Positions 11,569 to 59,474 of a stretch of 64,000 bases of DNA are shown here, piece by piece. Source of the DNA: Macrostomum lignano (Eukaryota); assembly GCA_002269645.1 (NCBI GenBank), contig NIVC01001100.1, forward strand, positions 1 to 64,000, in the 5' to 3' direction. Position 1 is the stretch's first letter. Every line of letters starts with the position of its first letter. A program made the position numbers and the translations under genes. The notes under the pieces were generated by a model. The model worked only from the letters and a program-made list of their open reading frames with translations, was not told where the DNA came from and made no database searches.

Positions 11569-11607
11569 CTAACTAACTAACTAACTAACTAACTGACTAA
11601 CTAACTG

Positions 11608-11670
<63 letters not shown>

Positions 11671-11691
11671 GACTAACTAACTAACTAACTG

Positions 11692-11750
<59 letters not shown>

Positions 11751-11751
11751 G

Positions 11752-11787
<36 letters not shown>

Positions 11788-11788
11788 G

Positions 11789-11870
<82 letters not shown>

Positions 11871-11875
11871 GACTG

Positions 11876-11914
<39 letters not shown>

Positions 11915-11947
11915 GACTGACTAACTAACTAACTAACTAACTAACTG

Positions 11948-11978
<31 letters not shown>

Positions 11979-12015
11979 GACTAACTGACTAACTGACTGA
12001 CTAACTGACTAACTG

Positions 12016-12050
<35 letters not shown>

Positions 12051-12051
12051 G

Positions 12052-12115
<64 letters not shown>

Positions 12116-12175
12116 GCTAACTAACTAACTGACTAACTAACTAACTAACTGACTAACTAACTAACTAACTAACTG

Positions 12176-12214
<39 letters not shown>

Positions 12215-12241
12215 GACTAACTAACTAACTAACTAGCTAAA

Positions 12242-12326
<85 letters not shown>

Positions 12327-12351
12327 GACTGACTAACTAACTAACTAACTG

Positions 12352-12410
<59 letters not shown>

Positions 12411-12475
12411 GACTAACTGACTAACTGACTGACTAACTGACTAACTGACTAACTAACTAACTAACTAACTAACTG

Positions 12476-12515
<40 letters not shown>

Positions 12516-12575
12516 GCTAACTAACTAGCTAACTAACTAACTGACTAACTAACTAACTAACTAACTAACTGACTG

Positions 12576-12627
<52 letters not shown>

Positions 12628-12655
12628 GCTAACTAACTAGCTAACTAACTAACTG

Positions 12656-12694
<39 letters not shown>

Positions 12695-12695
12695 G

Positions 12696-12731
<36 letters not shown>

Positions 12732-12804
12732 GCTAACTAACTAACTGACTAACTAACTAACTAGCTAACTAACTAACTAGCTAACTAACTAGCTAACTAA
12801 CTAG

Positions 12805-12855
<51 letters not shown>

Positions 12856-12880
12856 GCTAACTAACTAGCTAACTAACTAG

Positions 12881-12930
<50 letters not shown>

Positions 12931-13027
12931 TAACTTAACTAACTAACTGACTAACTAACTAACTAACTAACTAACTAACCTAACTAACTAACTAACTGAC
13001 TAACTAACTAACTAGCTAACTAACTAG

Positions 13028-13074
<47 letters not shown>

Positions 13075-13126
13075 GCTAACTAACTAGCTAACTAACTAGC
13101 TAACTAACTAACTAACTAACTGACTG

Positions 13127-13182
<56 letters not shown>

Positions 13183-13207
13183 GCTAACTAACTAGCTAAC
13201 TAACTAG

Positions 13208-13258
<51 letters not shown>

Positions 13259-13283
13259 GCTAACTAACTAGCTAACTAACTAG

Positions 13284-13345
<62 letters not shown>

Positions 13346-13375
13346 GACTAACTAACTAACTAGCTAACTAACTAG

Positions 13376-13474
<99 letters not shown>

Positions 13475-13494
13475 GCTAACTAACTAGCTAACTT

Positions 13495-13537
<43 letters not shown>

Positions 13538-13552
13538 GACTAACTAACTAAC
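11569..13552. repeat. ~2-kb (CTAA)n/(TTAG)n microsatellite
   Basis: About 500 units with CTGA/CTAG variants, filling ANKFN1 intron 3. Confidence 0.98.
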
Positions 13553-23980: not shown

Positions 23981-26101
23981 GAATGCGAGTTGAGGTGGTT
24001 CGGATCAGATTTAAGATCTGAAATGCTCCCATTTTATAAGCTCAAAATGTTTCAAATAGATTTCCACTGCAACCAAAATCTTCCTGTATCCATATCTGTA
24101 CTTTAACCTATCACTTATTAACATTAAGTGTCTCATTAATGTATTGTATAAGAAGAATAACTGGGCCTTCCTCTTAACTTAAGCCTTGGCCATCCTATCC
24201 ACAAAATGTACATATGGAATTAGATTTAGAATTGCTCTTATAAAAGCTTTGAAACTAGCAAAGTTCAATTTTTATTAAGTCTGAAGCTGCAAACTGGTCT
24301 AAGTATTTTAGGTTTTTAGTTTAGTGGCTAATATTACTAGATACATAATGACCTGGCCTAGATATGGAAAATTTGTTTTCATAACAATGTTTATATTAAT
24401 ATATTCTACCTAGACCTTTAGATCAGAAACTTCCTATAGCTATGTACATAGCTATGGTAAAATACTAGTTTAAGACTAAAAATTCTAGCTGCTAGCTAAT
24501 AAGATTTTCAACAATGTGGTCTCCTATTTATAGAATTAACAATATGAAAAGGCCAAAGCTTGAGCCTTGAGCCTAACTAATACAAACTTATTATATAAAC
24601 TTTAACTAATAACACAAGATTAGTATATTAATTAGAGATATAGTATATTGTGATGCTGTTGTTGTAGAGGTCCATCACTACAGAGATAAGAGCCGGGGGG
24701 ATGCCAGAGTGCTCGAGCAGCTACGCGATCGCGCGCCGGCACACTGAGTGAAAAGCTTTGCAGAAGTCCACAAAGACAATTGACAGCTCTTTGGTGAGTT
24801 TTACAGGCCTCGACGACTGCTTGAAGGGCTGCAATCTGCTCTGTTGTTGAGCGGCCGGGCCTGAAGCCACTTTGGAGGCTCAGGATCATTTGGTTGAGGC
24901 CAGGCAGCAGCCGATTATGCAGCATAGCATTGAGCAGCTTAGCCAGAGTGCATTCCAGAGCGATGCTGCGTTGGTTGTCCAGACTGGTGGATGCGCCCTT
25001 CTTGGGGATGGAGACGATCTTAGAGGTGCGCCAGTTGTCAGCAACAGTAGCATCTGGGTTGCCTCCAAGCAGACAGTGCTTGTTGAGCACAGTTGTGATG
25101 TCCTGTGTCAGCTCCGGCAGCTTGAGCACCCTGGGTGGAATGCCATCTACTCCGGCGGCAGCGTTGAGGCGCATGGTCTTAAGCACTTGGCTCACCTCGT
25201 AGGCAGTCAGCGGGCCAGAGTTGAAAGTCGAGGGCTCAGCCAGGGTAAAGTTTTCGATCGGCAGCAAATCAGCAGAGGGTGGTGGAGCGTTGAGCACATT
25301 GTGGTAGTGAGTGGCCAGCAGGGCTTTGCGATGGTGTATGGACTCAGCACCTACAGCGGCATTGGCCCTCTGCTTCCTGCCAGTCAGGCGGTTGATGGCA
25401 TGCCAGGCCGCTGTGTGCCGGCAGTTGTCTGTTGCTAGTTGAATTTCAGCAACAGCCTCCTGGACAAAGGCTTCAGTCCTCTGGGCATGTGTGTCGCATA
25501 GTTGGGCTCAAGCTGTTTCAGCATGCTCACTGTCTTGGCCAAAGACTGTGGTTGTTCTTTGCACGTCGCGCCTAGCGATGGAGATCTCCTCGTCAGAGTC
25601 CCAGAGGGCTTTTGGCTGGTGCGGTTTTCGTTTTGGGAGGATCAAGGATCAAGGCAGCTTTCTCAACAGCTCTGGTGAAGGCGTCTGCCAATTCATTCAA
25701 GGCCGGAGTAGCATTTTGCAGCTTTTCAATGAACGCACTGCGCGTTCAACAGCAAAGCCTTTGTCCAAACCAGCGATGGCCCAACTGAGGACTTCTGCAC
25801 CAGCTCCGGAGTCCTCCAAGGTGACACGTTGGCCCCTCTGCTCTTCATCCTTGTTGTCGACTACGTGCTGCGCCGAAGCCTCACAGAGAAGACAGTTACC
25901 TGCTGGCGTCACGCCGGAGCTCCTGCCGCGGTGCTGCCCCTTTGCTCGCCCTTGCATATGCCAACGACATCGCCCTGCTGTGCTGCAGTCTGACTGCCAC
26001 CCAGAGAACACTCTCGAGACTCTATGAGGAGAGTGCCCAAGTCGGACTGCAAATCAACGCATGCAAGACGGAGGTGCTGCACATGGACACCGATGCAGCA
26101 C

Positions 26102-36646: not shown

Positions 36647-37530
<884 letters not shown>

Positions 37531-47040: not shown

Positions 47041-47399
47041 GTAAGGATCTCGATCCACTCGGAACAATTTGTGTCCTTGAGCAAGAGACACTGAACTCTG
47101 CATTGCTTCAGTTCATCCAGCTGTAAAATGGGGTAATTGAGGGTGTGTGTGGCGGCCCCCCAGTCCTTGGACTGAACAGCCGTACGCAGCCTTCAGATGC
47201 GCCGCGCAATAGCTGCGGCTGAGCTGTCGGTTGCACCTCTGCCGATTAGGCCAGGTGTAATCAATTATTAATTTAACAAGAAGTGATGCTTACTTCGTAA
47301 TAATTCGGCCTATGGGGATTATTCCAGTTTCAACTCTCATTGCTCATTTTTTCTACCTAAAATTGACAGAGAATTGCTAATCTCTTCCTTCCACTCCAG

Positions 47400-49562
47400 C
47401 CCCGGCTACAGCCGCCGCATTCTCCAGCCGTCTCCTCAAGAGGATTCCGACGCACTCGCCAGTGCTTTGCCGCCGTTCGGCCGCCATCGGCAGCAGCAGC
47501 GGCAGTACATCTACGGCAGCGGTCCTGAGGACGAGCTGGCGGACCTGGTCAGCCCGACCATGTCCCTCCTTGACCCGAACGAAGGCGTCGGCATTGTCGG
47601 CATCGATCCGTACGCCAAGTTCGCCAGCCCGGTGCTGCACCGGCGCGCCGGCTACCCGACGCCCGAGGCGGCCATCGCAGCCGCCGGTGTGATGAGTTCG
47701 CCGGTGTGCTCAGCCGAGGACGAGCCGCTGGACGATTTGGCGTCAAGCAGCCTGGCAGGTTTAAGCCGGAGCGACTCCTTCTACGAGAACCACCGGCCCT
47801 TGGCCGTGATGGCGCCGCGCCGTGGCCACCTGCGCTATCCACCAGCCGACTACGACTACAGCGCCGAGGACTACGAGGAGGCCGCGGTGACTCGGACGGG
47901 GGGTCGAAACGCTGCCTACCAGAGCAGCTTCTCGTCCGAGGACCAGCCGCTAAGCAGCGACTTCTCCAGCGCCGCTGGCGTCCACCAGCAACAGCTGCAG
48001 CAGCCGCAGCCGCAGAGGCAGCGGAGGCAGCAGCGCCACCTGCCAACGCCGCAAACTGCCGAGCAGCGGCAGCGCCGATTCGAAGCGACCTCGGCCGGGG
48101 TCAGCCAGGAGACGGACACCACCGTCAGCGACGCGAGCGGCGCCAACCTGGTTGGAGGAGGTCGCCCCAACAACCGACGGCTTCCTGGCGGCATCCGGGA
48201 GGAGGAGGAGGAGCTGAGCGCGGCGTCCTCGCTGCAGCAGCTGCACCAGCGGGGCTCTGACGAGGCCAGCGGAAGCTACGAGCGAAACCTGATCGCCCCG
48301 CCAATCGTTGATCGGCGATTCGCTAGCAGTGCTCGGCCGCCGTCCATCAGCAACCTGCGCGGCCAGAGTGCCATCACGGACGAAGACGACATCCCGCTTA
48401 GAGCAGAAGAAGCGATAGCGGCAGCCGGGGAAGAGTTTGAAGCAGAGGAGGCCGGCTTCGCCCCGCTGCAGACGGATTCGTTCGACAACAACTTCAATCG
48501 GAGCTTCGAGGACGAGGCCGGTCTGGACTTCGACGACCAGGAGCCGCCGGAACGAGAGCTGCTAACGCCGGTCGGTCAGCGAGGCGGCGTCGACCTGGAC
48601 ATCGACTATGACGGTCGGTTGACGCCCAGAGCAGGTGGCCAGTTCAGTGACGAAGAGCTACGGCCAGAGATGGGACGTGACGAAGCGGCGCCAATTCCGC
48701 AACCGATTCGACACGAACGCTTGACAGACGACGGCTTCAACGGACGACAGTCTGCTATTGAAGAGCTCGAGCCCGACCTTGACGATGGGAACTACTTTGA
48801 GCAATCGAGTCGAGAGGTTTCATTTGACCGCGGGCCGCCACCTCCGCCGCCGCTGCAGCGCTCGGAGGAGGACGAACTGGTGCTCGATGGGGACGCCGAT
48901 TTTCAGTCAGGCGCAGCTGAGGAGGCGCCGTACGACCGCTCGGCGGGCTACCGGCAGCGGGCTCGGACACTGTCTCGAGTGTCCGGTTTCGAAGAGGAAG
49001 TGGAAGAGGAGGAGGACGAGGCGCTGATGGTAAACAATCGAGACAGTCAAGACGCAGACGATGGCGAGCTGCTGTACGAGGAGACGGAAAGGCGGAGAGA
49101 CGACAGCCGCGACTTTGACGAGCCTCAAGACGGAGCAGAGCAGGACTTTGACGAAGAAGAGGAGGAGGACGATGAGGGCGGCAGCGGGATGTTCCGGCGA
49201 CGAACTTCGCTGCCAGATCGACGCTTGCTGTCGCCGACGGAAGGCGGCGGCGAGGACGCCGAGCTGGACGACGAGGCGGTCGAGGGCGAGGGCGAGTTGG
49301 ATCCGTTCTCGGATTACCGCGATTTCGAGCGCGAATTCGATGACGAGGCGGCTGCTGCTGAGGCCGCGGCTGCCGACGCCGAAGACGCCGCGGCGCAGGC
49401 GGCCGAGGAAGGCGACGAGCAGCCGGTAATCGAGGAGGAGGCTCTGTCACCCTCGACGCCGCCTCCTCGGCCCGAGTCACCGGTTGCTCGGCCGAAACTG
49501 TCCGACGAGGACGAGCGAGAAGCGGAGGATGAGTTTGACGAGAATCGGTTCGGGCGGCCGGG
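47400..49562 (+). CDS. unc-13: unc-13 giant acidic low-complexity exon (721 codons)
   Basis: 730-codon open frame with coding-like GC composition; CACTCCAG acceptor, GTGAGC donor, phase 2-2; lies between C2A and the CaM-site exon. Confidence 0.75.
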
Positions 49563-50131
49563 GTGAGCTGGGGCTCTTTGGTGAGGTCATTTGGGATGGA
49601 TGGGGTTATTAAGGTGGATGGGGTCATTTGGGGTCGGATGGGGTCATTTGGGGTCGGATGGGGTCATTTGGGGCTATATAGAGTTTTAAGGTTACAGTTA
49701 CGAGCGTATATTGACGTCACCAGATGAGACGTATTATCATTAACAAGAATTTTTACTTTGTGAATTTTACAGCAATGGAAAGAATATTGAGGTATAAAAA
49801 TATTTTGGCTTTACTACAGTGTAAAGCTTTTTAATCTATGCTGAAACCAATTATAATTAATAAGATAATGGCTTTCTACTCTCTTTTCTCAGGTTTTACT
49901 TGCTCTGGTGGCGGAATTATAAAAAAATTTCCCTTTTTGTTTACATTCTCTCTCAGTCCATGAGAATCTGCCTCTCCGCTCTCTGAGTCCACGAGAATCT
50001 GCTTTTTTGGATTGAGCTTACTCACTGCCTTGGCTATTTAAGCTACTCGCACAGTCAGTAGTCACAGTGGAGCACAATCACTATTAAATTTCCAAATGCA
50101 GCGCAAGCAACGGGGCCTACTATCCGTCCAG

Positions 50132-51035: not shown

Positions 51036-52051
51036 TTGAGACCTTCAAGTGTCTAGCTTACGTTAGCTTTTTTAGATTTTTTTCTAATTTAGCACAGAAA
51101 AACTTTTAACAATGTCCAACTTCCAGCTGTCAAGAGGGCTATTTCGAGTTGACTTACTCGTAGATTTATTTATAGGGCGAGTTGTAAAATTCTGATTTTT
51201 TTGCATATCAGCTTTGCCGGCACCTTTTCAACTGTAATCGCTGAGTGACTCAACATTCTGTCCCGCTCTTCTGCTATTCGTTCCGCCCCAACTCTGTCAA
51301 TGTAAATCTTCCCTATTGCCGGGAATTTTATCTGAAACTTTTTGTGAGCTATTTCCTGCAATCGGACGCGTTAAAAATGGCGACAGGCCCGCCAGAACCC
51401 CGCCTTGTTGGTGGGAACTCAACATATGAGTGCGGCAAATGACGGGCCTGAAGACCTGAGAGACCAGTCAGCCAATGCGAGTGCAGCTCGGCTAGGCAAA
51501 GTCTTTAAACTACAATGCGGAGAACGAGGCCGAGCTTGAGAGTGGATTAGCAACTCAGTATAGTGGATAAACACAGCCCTCCATACTATCCATAGTCTAT
51601 CCCAGCAATAATTTTCCCCACGCCGAATAATAGCAGCCAACGATTTTCGAGTCCGGGGGCGCACCCATCCGGTGTGGAGGGAGTCGCGGTCTGAACTGTT
51701 GAGCAGTTTTGGCTGATTCACGAGAAAAAATTATCTATATAGAGAGCAAAAGTTGGAGTTTAAAAATTTGCTTTAACCCAGTAAGGGGTATATTGTAGGT
51801 CAATAGAACAGTAAACCTGCTCAGCCAGGAGTCTGGCTCAGTTTCTGCTTTGCTAAAGAAACCCTGAAAGACAAAGAATGTCGACTGTAAACAAGAAGGC
51901 GGACAACTCCGATCCAGTCTCTGCGCCTCATCTAGGAGCTCTGGTCAAGCGCTACTCTGAGCACATTCTGGCTGCCGAGTCCGGAGCGACAGCAACATCT
52001 CGCGGGCATCGGGGCAGTCTGGACAGCAGCAGCAGCAGCAGCAGTGGCGTC

Positions 52052-52106
52052 GGGGGCCTACGGCCGACCTTCAAGAGGTGCCCCTGTTCTTAACTAACGG
52101 ACCGTA
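52052..52106 (+). ncRNA. HDV/CPEB3-like self-cleaving ribozyme (minimal, almost no P4)
   Basis: P1 GGGGGC/GCCCCU (G1-U wobble), P2 UACGGCCG/CGG(A)CCGUA, P3 ACC/GGU, L3 UUCAAGA, P1.1 C52072-G52086, J4/2 CUAA with candidate catalytic C52094; G1 coincides exactly with the TSD boundary. Confidence 0.82.
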
Positions 52107-55100
52107 CCACCACCGAGCCTGCGAAGAAGACCAAGAGAACGCGTCGAACTCCGAAAACCTTCTATCCGTCATGCGACTCCGCGGCGGCAACAGTGATATC
52201 TCAGTCCACCGCCGCCGGCCGCGTAGGAGACACAGGAGAGCAGCGTCGCGCAAAGCCGAGCCGGTCCAAGAGCTCCTCGTGCAGTTTAACTGCAATGGCA
52301 TCAAAAGCCGTAATACGGAGCTGGCCCACAGGCTGGCCTCCCTGCGCCCCGCCGCTATACTCCTTCAGGAAACCAAGCTTAAGAAAGAAGAAGATTATAA
52401 CCCGCCGCGGGGTTACGTGGTGGCCTCCAGGGAAGACGGAGTGCATAACGCCGGCCCCGATGACCGCGCTGTCGTGACACCTGCTCACCCAAATCGGCCA
52501 CCCGACACTGACGGTACAGGCACCGCCGGGACACGACGCCGTACCAACCCGCGCTGCCGGCTGAGATTCCCAGGACTCCGCGAAAACTGGTGCGCCGGAT
52601 GTCGCAGCGGCCGTACCGCCTGCAGCGTCCGTTTCACACCATGGCATGGCGCAGACAACCAATCTGTTCAAACCAGTGCATCCGGACGAGAAACCACCAG
52701 CACGCCACCGCCAGCCCAGTCCACTATCCCAAAAACCAACAAAAAAATTACAGGACGGGGAGGTACTATGGTGCTCGTCCGCGATGACGTCCAGTACGAC
52801 AGACTCAAAGTCGATAGAGAACACGACCTCCTGGACGTTGCCACCTGCCGCATCCGCCTCAAAGGACAGCAGCCGATCGTGATAGCATCTATCTATGCAC
52901 CACCATCCAGCTGCCAACGTCCCGATAACACCTGGCAACCCAGCTTCACCAATCTCCCGACTACCGGTAGAGTCATCCTCGGAGGCGACTACAACGCACA
53001 CGGAAGCTGGGACCGCCACATTGATGAAGATCTCAGAGGCCAGACCGTCGACGAGTGGGTCGCCCGCAATGGGCTCGTCATCTGCAATACCACCTGCCAC
53101 ACACGCACCTGCCCCAGTACTGGCCGCCTCAGTAGCCCAGACGTGACCATCTGTAGTAGCACCATTGCCGGATCCATCACGGACTCCTGGAAGACGCTAC
53201 CAGACTGGGGAAGCGATCACCTGCCGATCGTTTTCGGCCTCCCAGCCTCTAACACCGGAAAGACCCGTCACTGCGGGCAAAAACGCTGGATCTACAAGAA
53301 GGCAGACTGGGGAGCCTTCAGGGAGTCGCTAAATACCTGGGCAGAATCCGAAAGCAACGACACCACCTTAAACACAGAGGCCACACGCCTTGCCGAAGCC
53401 ATCCTGAACGCAGCAAGACTTGCCATCCCGCGCAGCTCCGGGAAAGAGACGAGACGCCTGCCGTTCTGGAACGACGCCTGCGAAGAGGCCTCCAAAGCTA
53501 CACGTTCCGCGAGACAATCCGCAGAAAAAGAACCGACACCAGAAAATATTATTGCCGCAAACAGAGCCCGCCACAACGCCTCAGGCTGTCTCCGGAGGGA
53601 GAAAAAAGCCTTCCTGTTCGACAAAGCGGCAAATTTCAGCCAGGACTCGGACATTTTTGGCTTACTCCGCGCACTGAGAGGCGATGGTTTTAAAACTCCG
53701 GACCCGGCTGCCATCGTCAGGGCCGCCTCCCCAGACTCGCCGGAGCGCACCGCCCGCACTAACAAAGAGAAGGCCGAACTCTTTTGCCAACTCTACGCCG
53801 AAGTTAGCCGAGTCCCCAGACGGAAAAATGACTCGGCCATCAGATACGAAGCGAACGAGGCCACCACGCCTATGGGTGACCCCCAAACAGACGGCCCGGA
53901 CGCCCCTTTCGAGATCGACGAGCTCCGCGCCGCTATCCGATGTCTCAAATCAGGGAAGGCTGTGGGAACCGACGGTGTCTCCAACGAGATGCTTAAACGC
54001 CTCCCGCCGGCCGCTGACAAAGCCTTACTCAGCCTCATCAACCGCACCTGGCGGGAGGGCAAAACACCGACCAGCTGGCGAATTGGCACTATTATACCGA
54101 TCCAGAAAAAAGGGAAAGACGCCGCATCACCGGATAACTACCGCCCCGTCGCACTTACCAGCTGCATCGCCAAGTGCGCGGAGCGCATGGTTCTGGCTCG
54201 TCTTAATTATGATCTGGAGAGCCGTGGCGGCCTCACGCCCACTCAAGCTGGTTTTCGTCGCGGTCGTAGCACCGAGGAACAGCTCGCGCGAGTCTGCCAA
54301 GCCATCTTTGACGGCCTCGAGAGTCTACCGGCGCTACGCAGCATCCTCTGCCTCCTCGACTTCTGCCGAGCGTATGACAGAGTCTGGCGCCTGGCCCTGT
54401 ATGCCAAAATGCACCGCATGGGCATCCCCAAGCGCATCATCCGCTGGATCCGCGGCTTCCTGTCGGACCGTCACAACGCAGTCCGCTGGGTTAACGCCAC
54501 GAGCCGCAACAGAGTCTTCCGCGAAGGTCTGCCACAGGGCAGTGTGCTAGCGCCCACGCTGTGGAATATCTATGTCAACGATTTAGCCCAAGCAGTCGCC
54601 GAGGCGAACCCTTTGGTTAGCCTCAGTCTCTACGCCGATGACTCGGCCTTACTGGCGACCGCTCGCACACTCGACATCTGTGCCAGAGAACTCCAACCAG
54701 CCCTGGATGCAGTGGCCGACTGGTGCCGAGATTGGAAAGTCTCCATTAGCACTGGGAAATGCTGCTACTCCACCTTCACTCTAGCGGCAAATGAAAACAA
54801 CGGCAAACGGAGAGTGAACCTCCAGATCAACGGCGACAAGCTTGCCTTCGATCCAACACCGACCTTCCTGGGACTCACTCTTGACGACAGCCTAAGTTTC
54901 AGCCACCATGCATCAAAGATCCGTAAAAAGATGGCCGCCCGCAGAAGACCTCTCACTGCCCTCGCTACCAGATCGGCCGGTGCGGACAGTCAGATCCTCC
55001 GCATGGCTTACATCGCCACCGTTCGCTCTGCTGCCGACTACGCGTGCGGGGTCTGGGGGTCTTTCACTGCAGCCAGCTCTAAGCTGCTGATCGACCGCCA

Positions 55101-56337
55101 ACAGCACAGCTGTGCGCGGATCATCACTGGGTGCCTCCAACTTACTCACATCCGGGACCTGCTTGCGGTGGCGAACCTGTCGCCCTTCAGCCACCTGGTG
55201 CTACAACGTAGTGCGACGCTCAGAGAAAGAATCCTACGTCTCCCGCAGGACACTCCAGCACTTCAGGTCGCCAAAATGGACACCCGACCACGACTGAAGA
55301 ATCGAGCCTTTGAGAGCCACCAGAGAACACCGAGAGACCCAAAGGACATCGTCACCGTCCTCCACGACTACCAGCGAGAACACCGTGGTTGCTGGCGCCG
55401 CGTTAGCCAAGAGCTCGACAGACAGGGGCTGCTCAACGGCCCCACCAGGGAGCCCGCTCCGCAGCTCCAGCCGCCGTGGACGGCCCACGAAGCGATCACC
55501 TTCGACCTCAGTTTGGCTACGCAGTGCAGCCGCAGCCAGCCCCAGAGCCTCCGCAGCGATACTGCACTGAGGTACCTCGAGGAGCGCGGCTCCCACCCGG
55601 TCAGCGTTTGGACTGACGGCTCGGCCGCCGGCGGCACATCGGACGGCACCAGCGCAGCGGTGATCATCACCCCATGCTGGGGTCGGGTCGTCACCAGCGC
55701 TGCAGGGAACATCTGCAGCAGCACCCAGGCGGAACTTCAAGCCATACTGCTTGCCATCCAGAATACCAGAGAGCATCAATGTATCGACATCTTCACTGAC
55801 TCCCAGGCGGCCATTTACAACATCATGGCGAGCCAGCGCAGCAACAGCAGAATCGTCTCCGAAATTTGGAACCAGAGTAGCGATCACTCCATCCGCATCA
55901 CCTGGATACCGGCTCACTGCGGCATCCCCATGAACGAACGCGCAGATAGGGCGGCAAGACTGGCGACCGCAGATCAGAGCGACCATGGTGTCCCCATCAT
56001 GGCAGCCAGCGCTTACCTCTGCCGGGAAAGACGTGATCTAGACCTCGAGCTTTGGGGCCGTAAGGCGCCATGGCCAAGACTCCCAACCTTGCCGAGGAAA
56101 TTTGAGGTCCTGGTCAACCAGCTCCGCGCCGGCTGCAGCAACCTTGCCGCCGCCACTAGACTCCGACTCGGCCTGTCCGACTCCGACGTGTGCCCGGACT
56201 GCGGAGCTCGCGACACCGAGCAGCACATTCTTTTCGACTGCCCACGTGGGTTCGCGGCCCGCCCCGGCGAACAAGACGCACTCCTGGTTGACGCGAGCCT
56301 CACCATCAACCTTCTTCGCAGGCTGGGGCGCATCTAG
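52078..56337 (+). CDS. LINE polyprotein: AP endonuclease, reverse transcriptase, RNase H, CCHC knuckle (first ATG 52171)
   Basis: APE: QFNCNG, QETK, GDYNAH, SSPDVT, SDHLPI. RT: NYRPVALTS, QAGFRRGRST, GLPQGSVLAP, YADD, FLGLTLD. RNase H: WTDGS, AELQAI, TDSQAA, WIPAHCGIPMNERAD. Knuckle: CPDCGARDTEQHILFDC. Confidence 0.96.
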   Translation: MPLFLTNGPYHHRACEEDQENASNSENLLSVMRLRGGNSDISVHRRRPRRRHRRAASRKAEPVQELLVQFNCNGIKSRNTELAHRLASLRPAAILLQETKLKKEEDYNPPRGYVVASREDGVHNAGPDDRAVVTPAHPNRPPDTDGTGTAGTRRRTNPRCRLRFPGLRENWCAGCRSGRTACSVRFTPWHGADNQSVQTSASGRETTSTPPPAQSTIPKTNKKITGRGGTMVLVRDDVQYDRLKVDREHDLLDVATCRIRLKGQQPIVIASIYAPPSSCQRPDNTWQPSFTNLPTTGRVILGGDYNAHGSWDRHIDEDLRGQTVDEWVARNGLVICNTTCHTRTCPSTGRLSSPDVTICSSTIAGSITDSWKTLPDWGSDHLPIVFGLPASNTGKTRHCGQKRWIYKKADWGAFRESLNTWAESESNDTTLNTEATRLAEAILNAARLAIPRSSGKETRRLPFWNDACEEASKATRSARQSAEKEPTPENIIAANRARHNASGCLRREKKAFLFDKAANFSQDSDIFGLLRALRGDGFKTPDPAAIVRAASPDSPERTARTNKEKAELFCQLYAEVSRVPRRKNDSAIRYEANEATTPMGDPQTDGPDAPFEIDELRAAIRCLKSGKAVGTDGVSNEMLKRLPPAADKALLSLINRTWREGKTPTSWRIGTIIPIQKKGKDAASPDNYRPVALTSCIAKCAERMVLARLNYDLESRGGLTPTQAGFRRGRSTEEQLARVCQAIFDGLESLPALRSILCLLDFCRAYDRVWRLALYAKMHRMGIPKRIIRWIRGFLSDRHNAVRWVNATSRNRVFREGLPQGSVLAPTLWNIYVNDLAQAVAEANPLVSLSLYADDSALLATARTLDICARELQPALDAVADWCRDWKVSISTGKCCYSTFTLAANENNGKRRVNLQINGDKLAFDPTPTFLGLTLDDSLSFSHHASKIRKKMAARRRPLTALATRSAGADSQILRMAYIATVRSAADYACGVWGSFTAASSKLLIDRQQHSCARIITGCLQLTHIRDLLAVANLSPFSHLVLQRSATLRERILRLPQDTPALQVAKMDTRPRLKNRAFESHQRTPRDPKDIVTVLHDYQREHRGCWRRVSQELDRQGLLNGPTREPAPQLQPPWTAHEAITFDLSLATQCSRSQPQSLRSDTALRYLEERGSHPVSVWTDGSAAGGTSDGTSAAVIITPCWGRVVTSAAGNICSSTQAELQAILLAIQNTREHQCIDIFTDSQAAIYNIMASQRSNSRIVSEIWNQSSDHSIRITWIPAHCGIPMNERADRAARLATADQSDHGVPIMAASAYLCRERRDLDLELWGRKAPWPRLPTLPRKFEVLVNQLRAGCSNLAAATRLRLGLSDSDVCPDCGARDTEQHILFDCPRGFAARPGEQDALLVDASLTINLLRRLGRI

Positions 56338-57906
56338 CGCCCCCGTCTCTTGCAGCTCAGCTGACATCGAGACGTGCGGTGCAGAGAGAGAGAGAGAGAG
56401 AGAGAGAGCAGTGGCGTCACTCTTCTTGAAATGGCTAACAGAGCGGCTGCCGCAGCAGCAGCTTCGAAGCAGAAAACTCGACAGAAAGTTGAGCAGAAAA
56501 CTGTAAGAAATCTGAGCTCTGCAACTACAGGAAAATTAGGATTGAAAAGTGCTGTTTATGCGTGCATCTGACAGGTCTGGCCCTGGATACTGGAATAACT
56601 AGATGGGCCACTCAGCACATTTGCGTGTAAGCTACTTTCAGTTCAGTAGTAAATTAAACAGAAGCATTTAAATGCATGTTTAAAGCCAAGGCTCATTTAT
56701 TGGCTCTTTACCCCCAGCTTAAACCCTCCAGCCGCGCCTTTCCACACTCCCCCGCCTCAGTTTTTATTGCCTTCTCGGAATTCCAGCCTAAAGCTGCCAT
56801 GTACATTTCAGAGGACTGGCTAATGTACATTATGGCTGAACCAATTAGCAAGTTGTTTACGCCTGCAAGCCCGGGCTTCTAAGCTTATCAAAGTCATTTC
56901 AGCCGCCTTTATTTTTATAAAATAGCTTATGTATTCTTTTTTGCTACTGAACTGAAGGTAGAAAGCTGTTTTACTAAGCATACTGCCTGAGTTATTTTAG
57001 TATCTGTGGCTCTGACTAACGAGGACTTCTTGCAGTGGAAGTGTGTGCGGCAACTTAAAATTACTTTAAACCTACATTTCCACTTTAGTAGTCCTTGACT
57101 GACGCTTCCGAACCATTGTACCCATTCGATAGGTAGCGTACAGATCGCCCCAGATCAGCCCAGAACCAGCCAGCATCAGATATCGCAAATGAAAGATAAA
57201 ATCCCAAGAAAATTTAGCCAAAAAGCAATTACGCGATTATACGAGTATCCTGAGGGCTAGCCACGGTTGCCTCACAAGTATTACTTAGACTAGTAAAACA
57301 TATAAAAGTGCTTCCATTTCCGTTGCAACTAAAAATGTCAATTACGTTATTAAAAACAACAAAAGGCCGAAGCCAGTCGCAGTCGTTGGACTCAGTCGAT
57401 CAGGCAAAGAGTCGTTGCCGCCTCGCTGTTTGTAAGTTTCTTCTTCCGCTTCGCTTGCTCCAAATTTACCAAAGTCACTCAGCGACTACACACTGTACTG
57501 TATTTTTGTGCGAAAAAAAAGCATCTGCATTTTTGTCCACCTTCTCTACTAACAGTAGAGTGAAATGCGGTCGGAAATTATTTTTGCTTTAAATTAATTT
57601 AAAGTTAATTCAGGATATGAGTAGAAGAGAAAAGTGAGTCTGTTGCCTTCACGCGGAGAATTGCCTCCCCCCTCCCCACCTAAATCATCCCACAGCTCTT
57701 ACTCGCTCTCTACCCAGTGCCGTATCTCTTCCCCTTCTCATTTCCTTCCTCTCTCTATTATGAAACCGAAATCTTTAAGCTGATAAAAAGTGCACCGCAC
57801 TCCCTGGTGATTGGGGAGAATATTTGTGAAGAACGGCTCGTCAGGGGTTGCGCTTGAATAGATATTAACCGCTGTGGTAGAGGCTGGCACAGCTGCCTAC
57901 CTGCCC

Positions 57907-59020
<1,114 letters not shown>

Positions 59021-59474
59021 TTTTTGTGAATCACTCCTATAGCCTCTGAGCCCCCACTTGTCATTGTCATCCATCAGCAGTTCAGCAGGCAGTTTTTTTC
59101 AGCAAACATTCATTTCCCCCTCTCAACATCGTGGCCTGTCTATTGGCAGGGCGGGTTTGCTAGCTAGTTCTAACTACATGTGGTACAGAATACCTGGCAT
59201 TTATTCCCCGGGATCCTGCTGAGTAGTTTTGTATCCAAATTCCTAGTCTGCCATCGCCCACTCACTCTGCCTCCCTCTCTGCTCCTCTTAGTCTCAACCC
59301 AACTCACTCAAACGTGAAAACAGCAGCTCTGCGCTCTCCAGCTGTGAGTCGTGCAGGTCGCCCAGTCTCTGCTGACAGAATTGAATTGTTCTCAACTAAG
59401 CTTAACTGTAATTTTGAGTGATAGCTGTTACTTTAACCTGTTTTAATCGAGGGGTAGTTTTTAAGCTTTATAAG

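What the first reader, a model, noticed from the sequence alone, without database searches (positions are those of the whole stretch)
52052..52106. Minimal CPEB3/HDV-like ribozyme starting exactly at the LINE 5' end
Seen: the first base after the TSD starts GGGGGC, pairing with GCCCCU (52080-85; G1-U wobble). P2 UACGGCCG (52059-66) pairs with CGG[A]CCGUA (52098-106). P3 is ACC/GGU around L3 UUCAAGA. C52072-G52086 next to U52071/U52087, and a U..G at L3 positions 1 and 6, mirror the human CPEB3 ribozyme (GGGGGCC...UUCACGU...GCCCCUGU). J4/2 is CUAA. P4 is reduced to ~6 nt and P1 has 6 bp rather than the usual 7. Known: HDV-like ribozymes define the 5' ends of R2, RTE and L1Tc/ingi RNAs. Inference: a ~55-nt, nearly P4-less ribozyme releases the element RNA from host transcripts.
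Basis: partly seen in the sequence, partly recalled or inferred. Interest (0 to 1): 0.85.

Follow-up and report, generated by a model that had tools for sequence, protein, structure and literature searches.

The report
Compact HDV-like ribozyme at LINE start
The first 55 bases of a recently inserted flatworm LINE retrotransposon can fold into the HDV/CPEB3-type self-cleaving ribozyme in a very compact form without helix P4, which would cut the element's RNA free of host transcripts; this is a known trick of LINEs, here in a new family and untested at the bench.

Summary
G52052 is the first base after a 12-bp target-site duplication, AGCAGTGGCGTC. The element is a 4.36-kb single-ORF LINE (APE, RT, RNase H, Cys/His knuckle) with a (GA)n tail, inserted in a host ORF, most likely in Macrostomum lignano.

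The fold is a nested double pseudoknot with a 6-bp P1, 8-bp P2, 3-bp P3, 7-nt L3 (U1, C3, G6), a one-pair P1.1, no P4, and J4/2 CUAA. Segment by segment this matches the validated P4-less "minimal" HDV-like ribozymes such as drz-Mtgn-1.

A permissive descriptor matches once in the window. In composition-matched shuffles it matches about 3 times per million positions.

Two related LINEs (34-36% protein identity, from other organisms) carry the same fold upstream of their ORFs. Their P1 and P2 sequences are unrelated, and their P3-L3 core is shared.

Caveats:
- Rfam finds nothing, and theta-derived covariance models score it weakly.
- L3 position 5 is A, where HDV, CPEB3 and theta have C.
- Only one further copy could be examined, at protein level.
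- Catalysis is untested.

Verdict: probably a real 5'-processing ribozyme, and a new member of a known kind.

The parts
52040..52051 (.). 5' copy of the target-site duplication, AGCAGTGGCGTC. Host sequence, at the end of a CAG repeat inside a host ORF.
   Evidence: Identical 12-mer at 56407-56418. Removing 52052-56418 restores a continuous ORF.
52052..52106 (+). Candidate minimal (P4-less) HDV-like self-cleaving ribozyme. Predicted cleavage is 5' of G52052.
   Evidence: All helices verified. Sole descriptor hit in the window. Top hit of the theta-derived model R2, though not significant. Same segment architecture as drz-Mtgn-1 and theta ribozymes.
52052..52057 (+). P1 5' strand, GGGGGC. G52052 is the +1 nucleotide of the G.U wobble pair.
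   Evidence: Pairs with 52080-52085; duplex energy -10.8 kcal/mol.
52058..52058 (+). J1/2, a single C. This is U in the second copy, P0001.
   Evidence: Pro-to-Leu change in P0001 implies CCU to CUU.
52059..52066 (+). P2 5' strand, UACGGCCG.
   Evidence: 8 bp with 52098-52106; duplex energy -9.9 kcal/mol.
52067..52069 (+). P3 5' strand, ACC.
   Evidence: Pairs with GGU at 52077-52079. ACC/GGU is also the commonest P3 in theta ribozymes.
52070..52076 (+). L3, UUCAAGA. U52070 and G52075 correspond to the U20.G25 reverse wobble of HDV. C52072 is the P1.1 partner. Position 5 (A52074) deviates from the C seen in HDV, CPEB3, theta, L006 and L007.
   Evidence: The requirement for U and G comes from PMC3386971.
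52077..52079 (+). P3 3' strand, GGU.
52080..52085 (+). P1 3' strand, GCCCCU, directly abutting P3 with no J3/1.
52086..52093 (+). G52086 (P1.1, pairs with C52072), then U52087, then the 6-nt linker UCUUAA that takes the place of P4.
   Evidence: The length from P1' to the catalytic C is 8 nt, the same as in drz-Mtgn-1 (GAUUUAGA).
52094..52097 (+). J4/2, CUAA. C52094 is the predicted catalytic cytosine. A52096 and A52097 are the predicted A-minor adenosines.
   Evidence: CUAA is the commonest J4/2 among theta ribozymes. Conservation of the two adenosines: PMC2175327.
52098..52106 (+). P2 3' strand, CGG[A]CCGUA, with A52101 bulged.
52078..56337 (+). Single LINE ORF of 1419 aa as listed. The frame is open back to 52051, and the first AUG is at 52171. 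Domains: APE 52279-53232, RT 54100-54804, RNase H 55600-55965, C-terminal Cys/His knuckle about 56191-56241.
52171..52188 (+). MRLRGG, a motif like the C-terminal tail of ubiquitin, starting at the first AUG. Related LINEs have a 2A peptide at this place.
56383..56406 (+). (GA)n 3' tail of the element.
56407..56418 (.). 3' copy of the target-site duplication, AGCAGTGGCGTC.

Best explanation
The first 55 nt of this LINE encode a compact, P4-less ribozyme of the HDV-like (delta-like, drz) class.

**Proposed mechanism.**
1. The element is transcribed as part of a longer host transcript. This copy sits inside a host ORF.
2. The RNA folds into a nested double pseudoknot: P1 6 bp, P2 8 bp, P3 3 bp, and a one-pair P1.1.
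3. C52094 in J4/2 acts as the general acid. A Mg2+ ion is held by the G52052.U52085 wobble and the U52070/G52075 pair in L3.
4. The chain is cut immediately 5' of G52052.
5. The result is an element RNA with a 5'-OH whose first base is the first base of the DNA copy. Full-length insertions therefore begin at GGGGGC directly after the TSD.

**Shown here:** the sequence, the pairings, the position at the TSD-defined end, the statistical rarity, the same 5' end in a second copy to within a codon, and the same fold in two related LINEs.

**Inferred:** catalysis, co-transcription with host genes, and any further role of the fold. By analogy with other LINE ribozymes, such roles could be cap-independent translation start or binding of the element's protein.
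For: 1. All helices and core nucleotides are present at the stated coordinates.
2. The fold starts exactly at the TSD-defined 5' end. The empty site reconstructs to an intact host ORF.
3. It is the only hit of an HDV-like descriptor in 128 kb. Shuffles give 0.4 hits per window and 2.9e-6 per position at the LINE's own composition. With U1/C3/G6 in L3 and CNAA in J4/2 also required, there are 0 hits in 1.74 M positions.
4. The segment-by-segment architecture equals the biochemically validated minimal drz drz-Mtgn-1 and the theta ribozymes: P1 6 bp, J1/2 1-3 nt, P3 ACC/GGU, 7-nt L3 starting U, 5-8-nt linker, J4/2 CUAA.
5. Two LINEs with 34-36% protein identity, from JGI metagenome contigs, carry the same fold upstream of their ORFs (L006 129-190, L007 18-71). 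P1 and P2 differ at most positions yet every pair is kept. The P3-L3 core is shared: CCC-UKCACGU-GGG against ACC-UUCAAGA-GGU here. A general descriptor hits only 1-3% of shuffled upstream regions.
6. A second genomic copy, inside the chimeric gene model P0001, is about 99% identical. Its similarity begins at the first codon of the element. Its only change within the ribozyme is in the unpaired J1/2.
7. The summed helix energies, about -21.6 kcal/mol before any loop or pseudoknot penalty, exceed the -14.2 kcal/mol of the best nested alternative.
8. Precedent: HDV-like ribozymes sit at the 5' ends of R2, R4, Dong, baggins and L1Tc. P1 of 6-7 bp, P4 absent in some, and one-pair P1.1 in L1TcRz are all documented.
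Against: 1. No Rfam family reaches even E = 10 at this site.
2. Covariance models built from 34 theta ribozymes give only 12.7 bits (E 0.55; top hit in the window) and 5.6 bits (correct register, not significant window-wide).
3. L3 position 5 is A. HDV, CPEB3, every listed theta ribozyme, L006 and L007 all have C there. The theta motif was constrained to NCGY on the basis of more than 97% conservation. P0001 also cannot have C at this position, so it is a family trait.
4. P1.1 has a single Watson-Crick pair. C52051 at position -1 could extend P1 by pairing with G52086 and so compete with P1.1. That effect reduced cleavage in L1TcRz.
5. Four other relatives with upstream sequence show no such motif: L005, L008, L009, L010.
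6. No DNA-level copies of the same family could be fetched, so covariation within the family is untested.
7. My descriptors were written after seeing the candidate.
Confidence: 0.65

Rival explanations
1. The HDV-like fold is real and inherited, but in this family it is catalytically weak or dead. The causes would be L3 A52074, a one-pair P1.1 and no P4. It would persist as a structural 5' element, for example for binding the element's protein or for translation initiation. The 5' end would then be set by an internal promoter.
For: L3 position 5 is A where every comparator has C. P1.1 has a single pair, and the -1 C could extend P1. The theta-derived models score it weakly. R2 examples are known in which a correct fold does not cleave in vitro (sow bug, horseshoe crab).
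Against: The insertion is young, with an intact 1419-aa ORF and a perfect 12-bp TSD. A second copy is about 99% identical, so the family was active recently with this very sequence. The catalytic C, the two adenosines, the G.U wobble and the L3 U and G are all kept. In vitro selection found variation at every randomised core position of the HDV ribozyme.
Confidence: 0.2
2. The match is a chance resemblance. The G-rich 5' end is simply the transcription start of an internal promoter, or includes untemplated G residues, and the pairings have no function.
For: Nested MFE folding is no better than shuffles (z = 0.03). There are no Rfam hits. A permissive descriptor gives 0.4 hits per shuffled window. 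Four of six relatives with upstream sequence lack the motif.
Against: The hit lies at the one position that matters, and the per-position chance is about 3e-6. All invariant core nucleotides are present. Two related LINEs have the same architecture with compensatory P1 and P2 changes and a shared P3-L3 core.
Confidence: 0.08

Closest known systems
Minimal (P4-less) HDV-like ribozymes: drz-Mtgn-1 to -4 (Riccitelli et al. 2014, as cited in PMC10879173) and theta ribozymes of gut Caudoviricetes (PMC10879173)
   Same: The segment plan is the same. P1 is 6 bp with G at +1, J1/2 is 1-3 nt, and P2 is 6-8 bp. P3 is 3 bp, and ACC/GGU is the commonest theta P3. L3 is 7 nt starting with U, with C at position 3 and G at position 6, and there is no J3/1. 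P4 is replaced by a 5-8-nt linker, J4/2 is CUAA, and the total length is 51-55 nt.
   Different: The host and context differ: a eukaryotic LINE 5' end rather than a phage tRNA 3' trailer. L3 reads AAGA where theta has NCGY. P1.1 is C-G plus U.U rather than two pairs. P2 has a bulge. Theta-derived covariance models do not score it significantly. The theta authors found almost all minimal drz in phages and reported only 12 theta hits outside them, all bacterial, so none in the eukaryotic genomes they scanned.
HDV-like ribozymes at non-LTR retrotransposon 5' ends: R2, R4, Dong, baggins, RTE, and L1Tc/ingi (L1TcRz in Pr77)
   Same: The position is the very 5' end of the element RNA, and the proposed role is release from a co-transcript. 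P1 of 6-7 bp and a variable or absent P4 occur in R2 (Bombyx R2 has no P4). L1TcRz has a one-pair P1.1. L1Tc pairs the ribozyme with an N-terminal 2A peptide. Relatives of this LINE have 2A, and this one has an LRLRGG motif in the same place.
   Different: This is a different LINE family and host (free-living flatworm). There is no sequence similarity to Pr77. It is much more compact than the R2 ribozymes, whose J1/2 can run to hundreds of nt. Nothing here has been tested biochemically.
Mammalian CPEB3 intronic ribozyme (Rfam RF00622)
   Same: The first 7 nt, GGGGGCC, are the same. One search confirms the mouse start GGGGGCCACA. L3 has U, U, C, A at positions 1-4 and G at position 6. G and U follow P1, giving a C-G plus U.U P1.1. 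The catalytic C is followed by N-A-A. Residue identities U20, U21, C22, A23, G25, G37, U38, C57 and A60 are confirmed in PMC4836649. The full CPEB3 sequence is from memory.
   Different: CPEB3 has a P4 hairpin, a J3/1 nucleotide with a C.A or C-G seventh P1 position, and C at L3 position 5. It lies in a mammalian intron. The Rfam CPEB3 model does not match here. The likeness is of core nucleotides, not evidence of common descent.

Membership tests
HDV-like (delta-like) self-cleaving ribozymes | Nested double-pseudoknot topology: P1 crossing P2, P3 nested in both, P1.1 between L3 and the nucleotides after P1' | tested here: met
   All pairs were enumerated with coordinates. Found by two independent descriptor scripts.
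HDV-like (delta-like) self-cleaving ribozymes | G at +1 forming a G.U wobble at the base of P1 | tested here: met
   G52052.U52085.
HDV-like (delta-like) self-cleaving ribozymes | L3 with the invariant U and G (U20.G25 reverse wobble in HDV numbering) | tested here: met
   U52070 and G52075 at L3 positions 1 and 6. The requirement is described in PMC3386971.
HDV-like (delta-like) self-cleaving ribozymes | Catalytic C opening J4/2, followed by N and two purines, ideally A-A, that dock in P3 | tested here: met
   C52094-U-A-A. A-A conservation is described in PMC2175327. Catalysis itself could not be tested.
HDV-like (delta-like) self-cleaving ribozymes | Canonical dimensions of the original search motif: 7-bp P1 and a P4 helix | tested here: not met
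   P1 is 6 bp and P4 is replaced by 6 nt. Both departures occur in accepted members: R2 has 6-7-bp P1, and P4 is absent in Bombyx R2 and in minimal drz.
HDV-like (delta-like) self-cleaving ribozymes | C at L3 position 5 (C24 in genomic HDV; NCGY in the theta motif) | tested here: not met
   A52074. HDV (from memory) and CPEB3 (A23 and G25 confirmed, the C between them from memory) have C there, as do all listed theta ribozymes, L006 and L007. Whether this is tolerated is unknown.
HDV-like (delta-like) self-cleaving ribozymes | Match to a curated covariance model (Rfam HDV, CPEB3, drz-Agam, F. prausnitzii families) | tested here: not met
   No hit at gathering score in the window, and none at E up to 10 in 51950-52250. 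The L006 motif, which has a P4, is also missed, so these models are narrow.
HDV-like (delta-like) self-cleaving ribozymes | Mg2+-dependent self-scission giving 2',3'-cyclic phosphate and 5'-OH, abolished by C-to-U at the catalytic C | not testable with these tools
   Needs in vitro transcription and cleavage assays.
Theta ribozymes (tRNA-associated minimal drz of Caudoviricetes) | Match to the theta motif and sequence family, with the cleavage site at a phage tRNA 3' end | tested here: not met
   Models R1 and R2, built from 34 theta sequences, score the candidate at 5.6 and 12.7 bits (E 0.55). L3 is AAGA, not NCGY. The context is a eukaryotic LINE, not a phage tRNA.
LINE 5'-terminal processing ribozymes (R2, L1Tc type) | Cleavage site coincides with, or lies a fixed distance upstream of, the element's 5' junction | tested here: met
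   The predicted cleavage site is the TSD/element boundary. The second copy's similarity starts in the same codon.
LINE 5'-terminal processing ribozymes (R2, L1Tc type) | Fold conserved with compensatory changes among copies and related elements | tested here: inconclusive
   Within the family, only one extra copy was available, at protein level, with one change in an unpaired base. Among related LINEs, 2 of 6 with upstream sequence have the fold with fully different P1 and P2. The other four lack it or lack their 5' ends.

The most novel reading that the evidence does not exclude
This flatworm LINE family may use the smallest natural eukaryotic HDV-like ribozyme yet seen: 55 nt, with no P4 and a 1-nt J1/2. 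Its L3 lacks the C conserved in HDV, CPEB3 and theta ribozymes. It may also be coupled to a ubiquitin-tail-like LRLRGG site at the start of the ORF, where relatives have a 2A peptide. If so, the element would free itself from host read-through products at both the RNA level and the protein level. The minimal drz form, so far reported almost only from phages, would then also be a working module of animal retrotransposons.
Probability: 0.25. Interest if true: 0.6.

Novelty: new member of a known kind. Interest (0 to 1): 0.4.

Why it matters
If the ribozyme is active, four things follow:
- It extends 5'-end processing by HDV-like ribozymes to an RNase-H-bearing LINE lineage in a free-living flatworm. 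That lineage appears related to the LINEs that carry 2A peptides.
- It shows that the P4-less minimal form is not confined to phages.
- It widens the L3 sequence tolerated by this ribozyme class.
- It gives a 55-nt natural 5'-processing module of the sort used in engineered R2-type RNA templates.

It also explains how this element can be expressed from insertions inside host genes. None of this overturns current understanding.

Tried and rejected
- **Rfam.** Gathering mode on the whole window and E-value mode on 51950-52250 gave no ribozyme family.
- **Nested MFE folding.** Uninformative, because it cannot represent pseudoknots.
- **Other copies in the window.** None. There is only a weak unrelated RT fragment at 24704-25243 on the minus strand.
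- **CPEB3-like DNA pattern in viral contigs.** 0 hits.
- **Protein-guided scans.** Metagenome contigs gave one distant RT fragment. Genome contigs and viral contigs gave nothing.
- **Exact-protein look-ups.** The window ORF, P0001 and P0011 are not on record.
- **Third homologue search.** The N-terminal 204 aa returned nothing, not even P0001.
- **Theta-derived covariance models.** A first MAFFT alignment with mixed J1/2 lengths was out of register and was discarded. The clean 34-sequence alignment gave models that put the candidate in the correct register without a significant score.
- **Related LINE loci without a motif.** L001-L003 are 5'-truncated, with an ORF1 upstream or cut off. L005 is the 44%-identity M. 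lignano subfamily, and no convincing motif was found. L008-L010 have none.
- **Catalytic-C control, theta-paper style.** Uninformative, because my rule accepted C at either of two positions.
- **Papers not held.** Riccitelli 2014, Webb 2009, Nehdi 2006 and Reymond 2007 could not be read. The tolerance of L3 position 5 could therefore not be settled from the literature.

Full report
**What is in the sequence**

Bases 52052-52106 on the + strand read GGGGGC C UACGGCCG ACC UUCAAGA GGU GCCCCU GU UCUUAA CUAA CGGACCGUA.
- P1: 52052-57 with 52080-85, 6 bp, closing with the G52052.U52085 wobble.
- P2: 52059-66 with 52098-106, 8 bp, with A52101 bulged.
- P3: 52067-69 with 52077-79.
- P1.1: C52072-G52086, with U52071 opposite U52087.
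- J4/2: CUAA, opening with C52094.

P1 crosses P2, P3 is nested in both, and P1.1 crosses P3. This is the nested double pseudoknot of the HDV class.

Duplex energies are -10.8 (P1), -9.9 (P2) and -0.9 (P3) kcal/mol, before any loop or pseudoknot penalty. The best nested fold of the same 55 nt is -14.2 kcal/mol.

**The element and its ends**

The fold sits at the start of a single 1419-aa ORF (52078-56337). The ORF has APE endonuclease, reverse transcriptase and RNase H domains, plus a C-terminal Cys/His knuckle.

The 12-mer AGCAGTGGCGTC occurs at 52040-52051 and again at 56407-56418. The second copy comes right after a (GA)n tail. Removing 52052-56418 joins the flanks into one continuous host ORF, MSTVNKK...SSSSSSGV|TLLEMANRAAA.... 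So the element spans 52052-56406, it is a young insertion into a host ORF, and G52052 is its first base.

**Host organism**

A chimeric gene model (P0001, UniParc UPI0007A11279) holds a second copy that is about 99% identical. Its similarity to this element begins in the codon that spans the 5' junction. The host part of P0001 is 100% identical to a Macrostomum lignano protein. A 44%-identity sister subfamily lies on M. lignano contig NIVC01002647.1. The window is therefore very probably from this flatworm, whose repeat-dense character it shares.

**Is the match more than chance?**

A permissive HDV-like descriptor has these requirements:
- P1 of 6-7 bp starting with G.U, and J1/2 of 0-2 nt.
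- P2 of 5-9 bp, with one bulge allowed.
- A 3-bp P3 and a 7-8-nt L3 with C at position 3.
- G immediately after P1', and a C near the end of J4/2.

It hits the window once on both strands, at 52052. It hits 0.4 times per dinucleotide shuffle of the window.

In 400 shuffles of the LINE itself (60% GC) it hit 5 times in 1.74 million positions. With U1/C3/G6 in L3 and CNAA in J4/2 also required, it hit 0 times.

The descriptor was written after seeing the candidate, so these figures flatter it.

**Tests that did not support it**

- Rfam finds nothing at gathering score in the window, and nothing from the HDV or CPEB3 families at E up to 10 around the site.
- I built two covariance models from 34 published theta ribozymes of uniform geometry. 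The sequences come from the supplement of PMC10879173.
  - The P2+P3 model ranks the candidate first in the window, but at 12.7 bits and E 0.55.
  - The P1+P3 model aligns it end to end from G52052 in the right register, but at only 5.6 bits.
- So it is not a sequence-level member of the theta family. A model that can hold only half of a pseudoknot has little power here.
- Rfam also misses the P4-bearing motif in L006, which shows how narrow the curated models are.

**Comparison with validated minimal ribozymes**

PMC10879173 gives drz-Mtgn-1 as GGUAGC AC ACCUAU GCG UUCCCGU CGC GCUACU GA UUUAGA CUAA AUAGGU. It also lists hundreds of theta ribozymes split by segment. The candidate has the same plan:
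- A 6-bp P1, a short J1/2, and no J3/1.
- A 3-bp P3. ACC/GGU is the commonest theta P3.
- A 7-nt L3 beginning with U.
- A 6-nt linker in place of P4, and J4/2 CUAA. The total is 55 nt, against 51-55 nt.

It differs in three ways:
- L3 reads UUCAAGA where the theta motif requires U-NN-NCGY.
- P1.1 has one Watson-Crick pair plus U.U, as in CPEB3.
- P2 has a bulge.

**Precedent in retrotransposons**

The R2 survey (PMC3774820) makes the relevant points:
- P1 is typically 6 or 7 bp.
- P4 ranges from long stems to too few nucleotides to pair. It is absent in Bombyx R2, and an abalone HDV-like ribozyme has 5 nt in its place.
- Cleavage at the exact 5' end is seen in R4, Dong, baggins and L1Tc.

L1TcRz has a one-pair P1.1 that is sensitive to upstream bases extending P1. 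Here C52051 could pair with G52086 in just that way. This particular insertion may therefore cleave less well than others.

**Related elements**

A search of 1.84 billion representative proteins with the first 400 residues found many LINE relatives. Many of them carry an N-terminal 2A peptide. For six relatives I could read sequence upstream of the ORF. Two have an HDV-like fold there.

| Locus | Protein | Identity | P1 | J1/2 | P2 | P3 | L3 | After P1' | P4 or linker | J4/2 |
|---|---|---|---|---|---|---|---|---|---|---|
| L006 129-190 | P0012 (has 2A) | 36% | GCCACC/GGUGGC | AA | CGGAGCA/UGCUCCG | CCC/GGG | UUCACGU | GU | short P4, GCCUC-GCGA-GAGGU | CAAAU |
| L007 18-71 | P0018 | 34-37% | GGAGAC/GUCUCU | AU | UUGGAACG/UGUUCCAA | CCC/GGG | UGCACGU | GC (P1.1 GC/GC) | 4 nt (AACA); 9 nt in all before P2', so also P4-less | non-canonical, CAAGU |

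Across the three elements most P1 and P2 positions change, yet every pair stays standard. The 13-nt P3-L3-P3' core is clearly related. A general descriptor hits 1-3% of shuffled upstream regions.

The other four loci (L005, L008, L009, L010) show no motif. Some of them may lack their true 5' ends. The trait is therefore present in part of the lineage and was not shown to be universal.

**Within-family evidence is thin**

- No DNA copy of the same family could be retrieved.
- In P0001 the 19 residues encoded by the ribozyme differ from the window at one position, Pro to Leu. That implies C52058U, in the unpaired J1/2.
- P0001 keeps Gln-Glu across L3. L3 position 5 therefore cannot be C in that copy either. 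The A (or G) there is a family trait, not a private mutation.

**Conclusion**

The most likely reading is that this is a working, compact, P4-less HDV-like ribozyme. [quoted passage not shown] I put this at about 0.65.

The main alternative, at about 0.2, is that the fold is inherited but catalytically weak or inactive in this family, and serves a structural role. Pure chance is unlikely, at about 0.08.

The finding is a new member of a known kind. LINE 5' ribozymes of this class, 6-bp P1 and P4-less forms are all on record. What is new is the host lineage, the degree of compaction in a eukaryotic element, and the L3 variant.

Noticed in passing
window 52153-52188 (ORF residues 26-37); P0016 residues about 353-367; P0012 residues 40-55: The LINE ORF begins with ...NLLSVMRLRGG|NSD. 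The 44%-identity M. lignano sister subfamily has ANLHRVLRLRGG|DSN. That matches the ubiquitin C-terminal tail LHLVLRLRGG (recalled from memory) at 9 of 10 positions. Many more distant relatives carry a 2A peptide (D[VI]ExNPGP) at the same place. This may be a protease or deubiquitinase cleavage site that frees the LINE protein from N-terminal fusions. No full ubiquitin fold is evident upstream of it.
   Followed up: partly
window 51880-52051 and 56419-56570: The LINE interrupts a host ORF (MSTVNKKADNSDPVSAPHLGALVKRYSEHILAAESG...SSSSSSGV|TLLEMANRAAAAAAASKQKTRQKVEQKTVRN...) just after a CAG repeat. The frame is continuous once the element is removed. In the host frame, translation runs into the element and stops at UAA, 52091-52093.
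   Followed up: partly
window 56383-56406: The element's 3' tail is (GA)n rather than poly(A).
   Followed up: no
window ORF residues about 160-182 (about 52555-52623); P0012, P0018, P0016: A conserved Cys motif, C-x(10-11)-W-C-x-G-C-x(6)-C (CRLRFPGLRENWCAGCRSGRTAC), is inserted between the two halves of the APE endonuclease domain. It is shared by relatives at 34-44% identity and looks like a zinc knuckle inside the endonuclease.
   Followed up: no
L006 129-190 and L007 18-71: Two metagenome-derived LINEs carry HDV-like folds upstream of their ORFs, with a CPEB3-like L3 (UUCACGU, UGCACGU). L007 is also P4-less with an odd J4/2 (CAAGU). L006 has a G-C rather than a G.U first pair in the 6-bp register. 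Neither is detected by Rfam.
   Followed up: partly
window 1-64000: The window is packed with minisatellites of 15-30 bp units and long tetranucleotide arrays. Examples are (CTAA)n at 11569-13552, (TCTA)n at 36647-37529 and (ATCT)n at 57907-59021. Several units contain TTTGGG or GGGTTTA-like cores.
   Followed up: no
window 24632-25297 (-): A fragment of an unrelated reverse transcriptase (RVT_1, 29% identity to the LINE), presumably a decayed retroelement.
   Followed up: no
window 47374-49566 (+): A 730-aa ORF in a GC-rich stretch with no Pfam match. It may be another repeat or element.
   Followed up: no
The word-indexed homologue search with the N-terminal 204 aa returned nothing, although P0001 contains this stretch almost identically. 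The negative result of that search should not be trusted.
   Followed up: no
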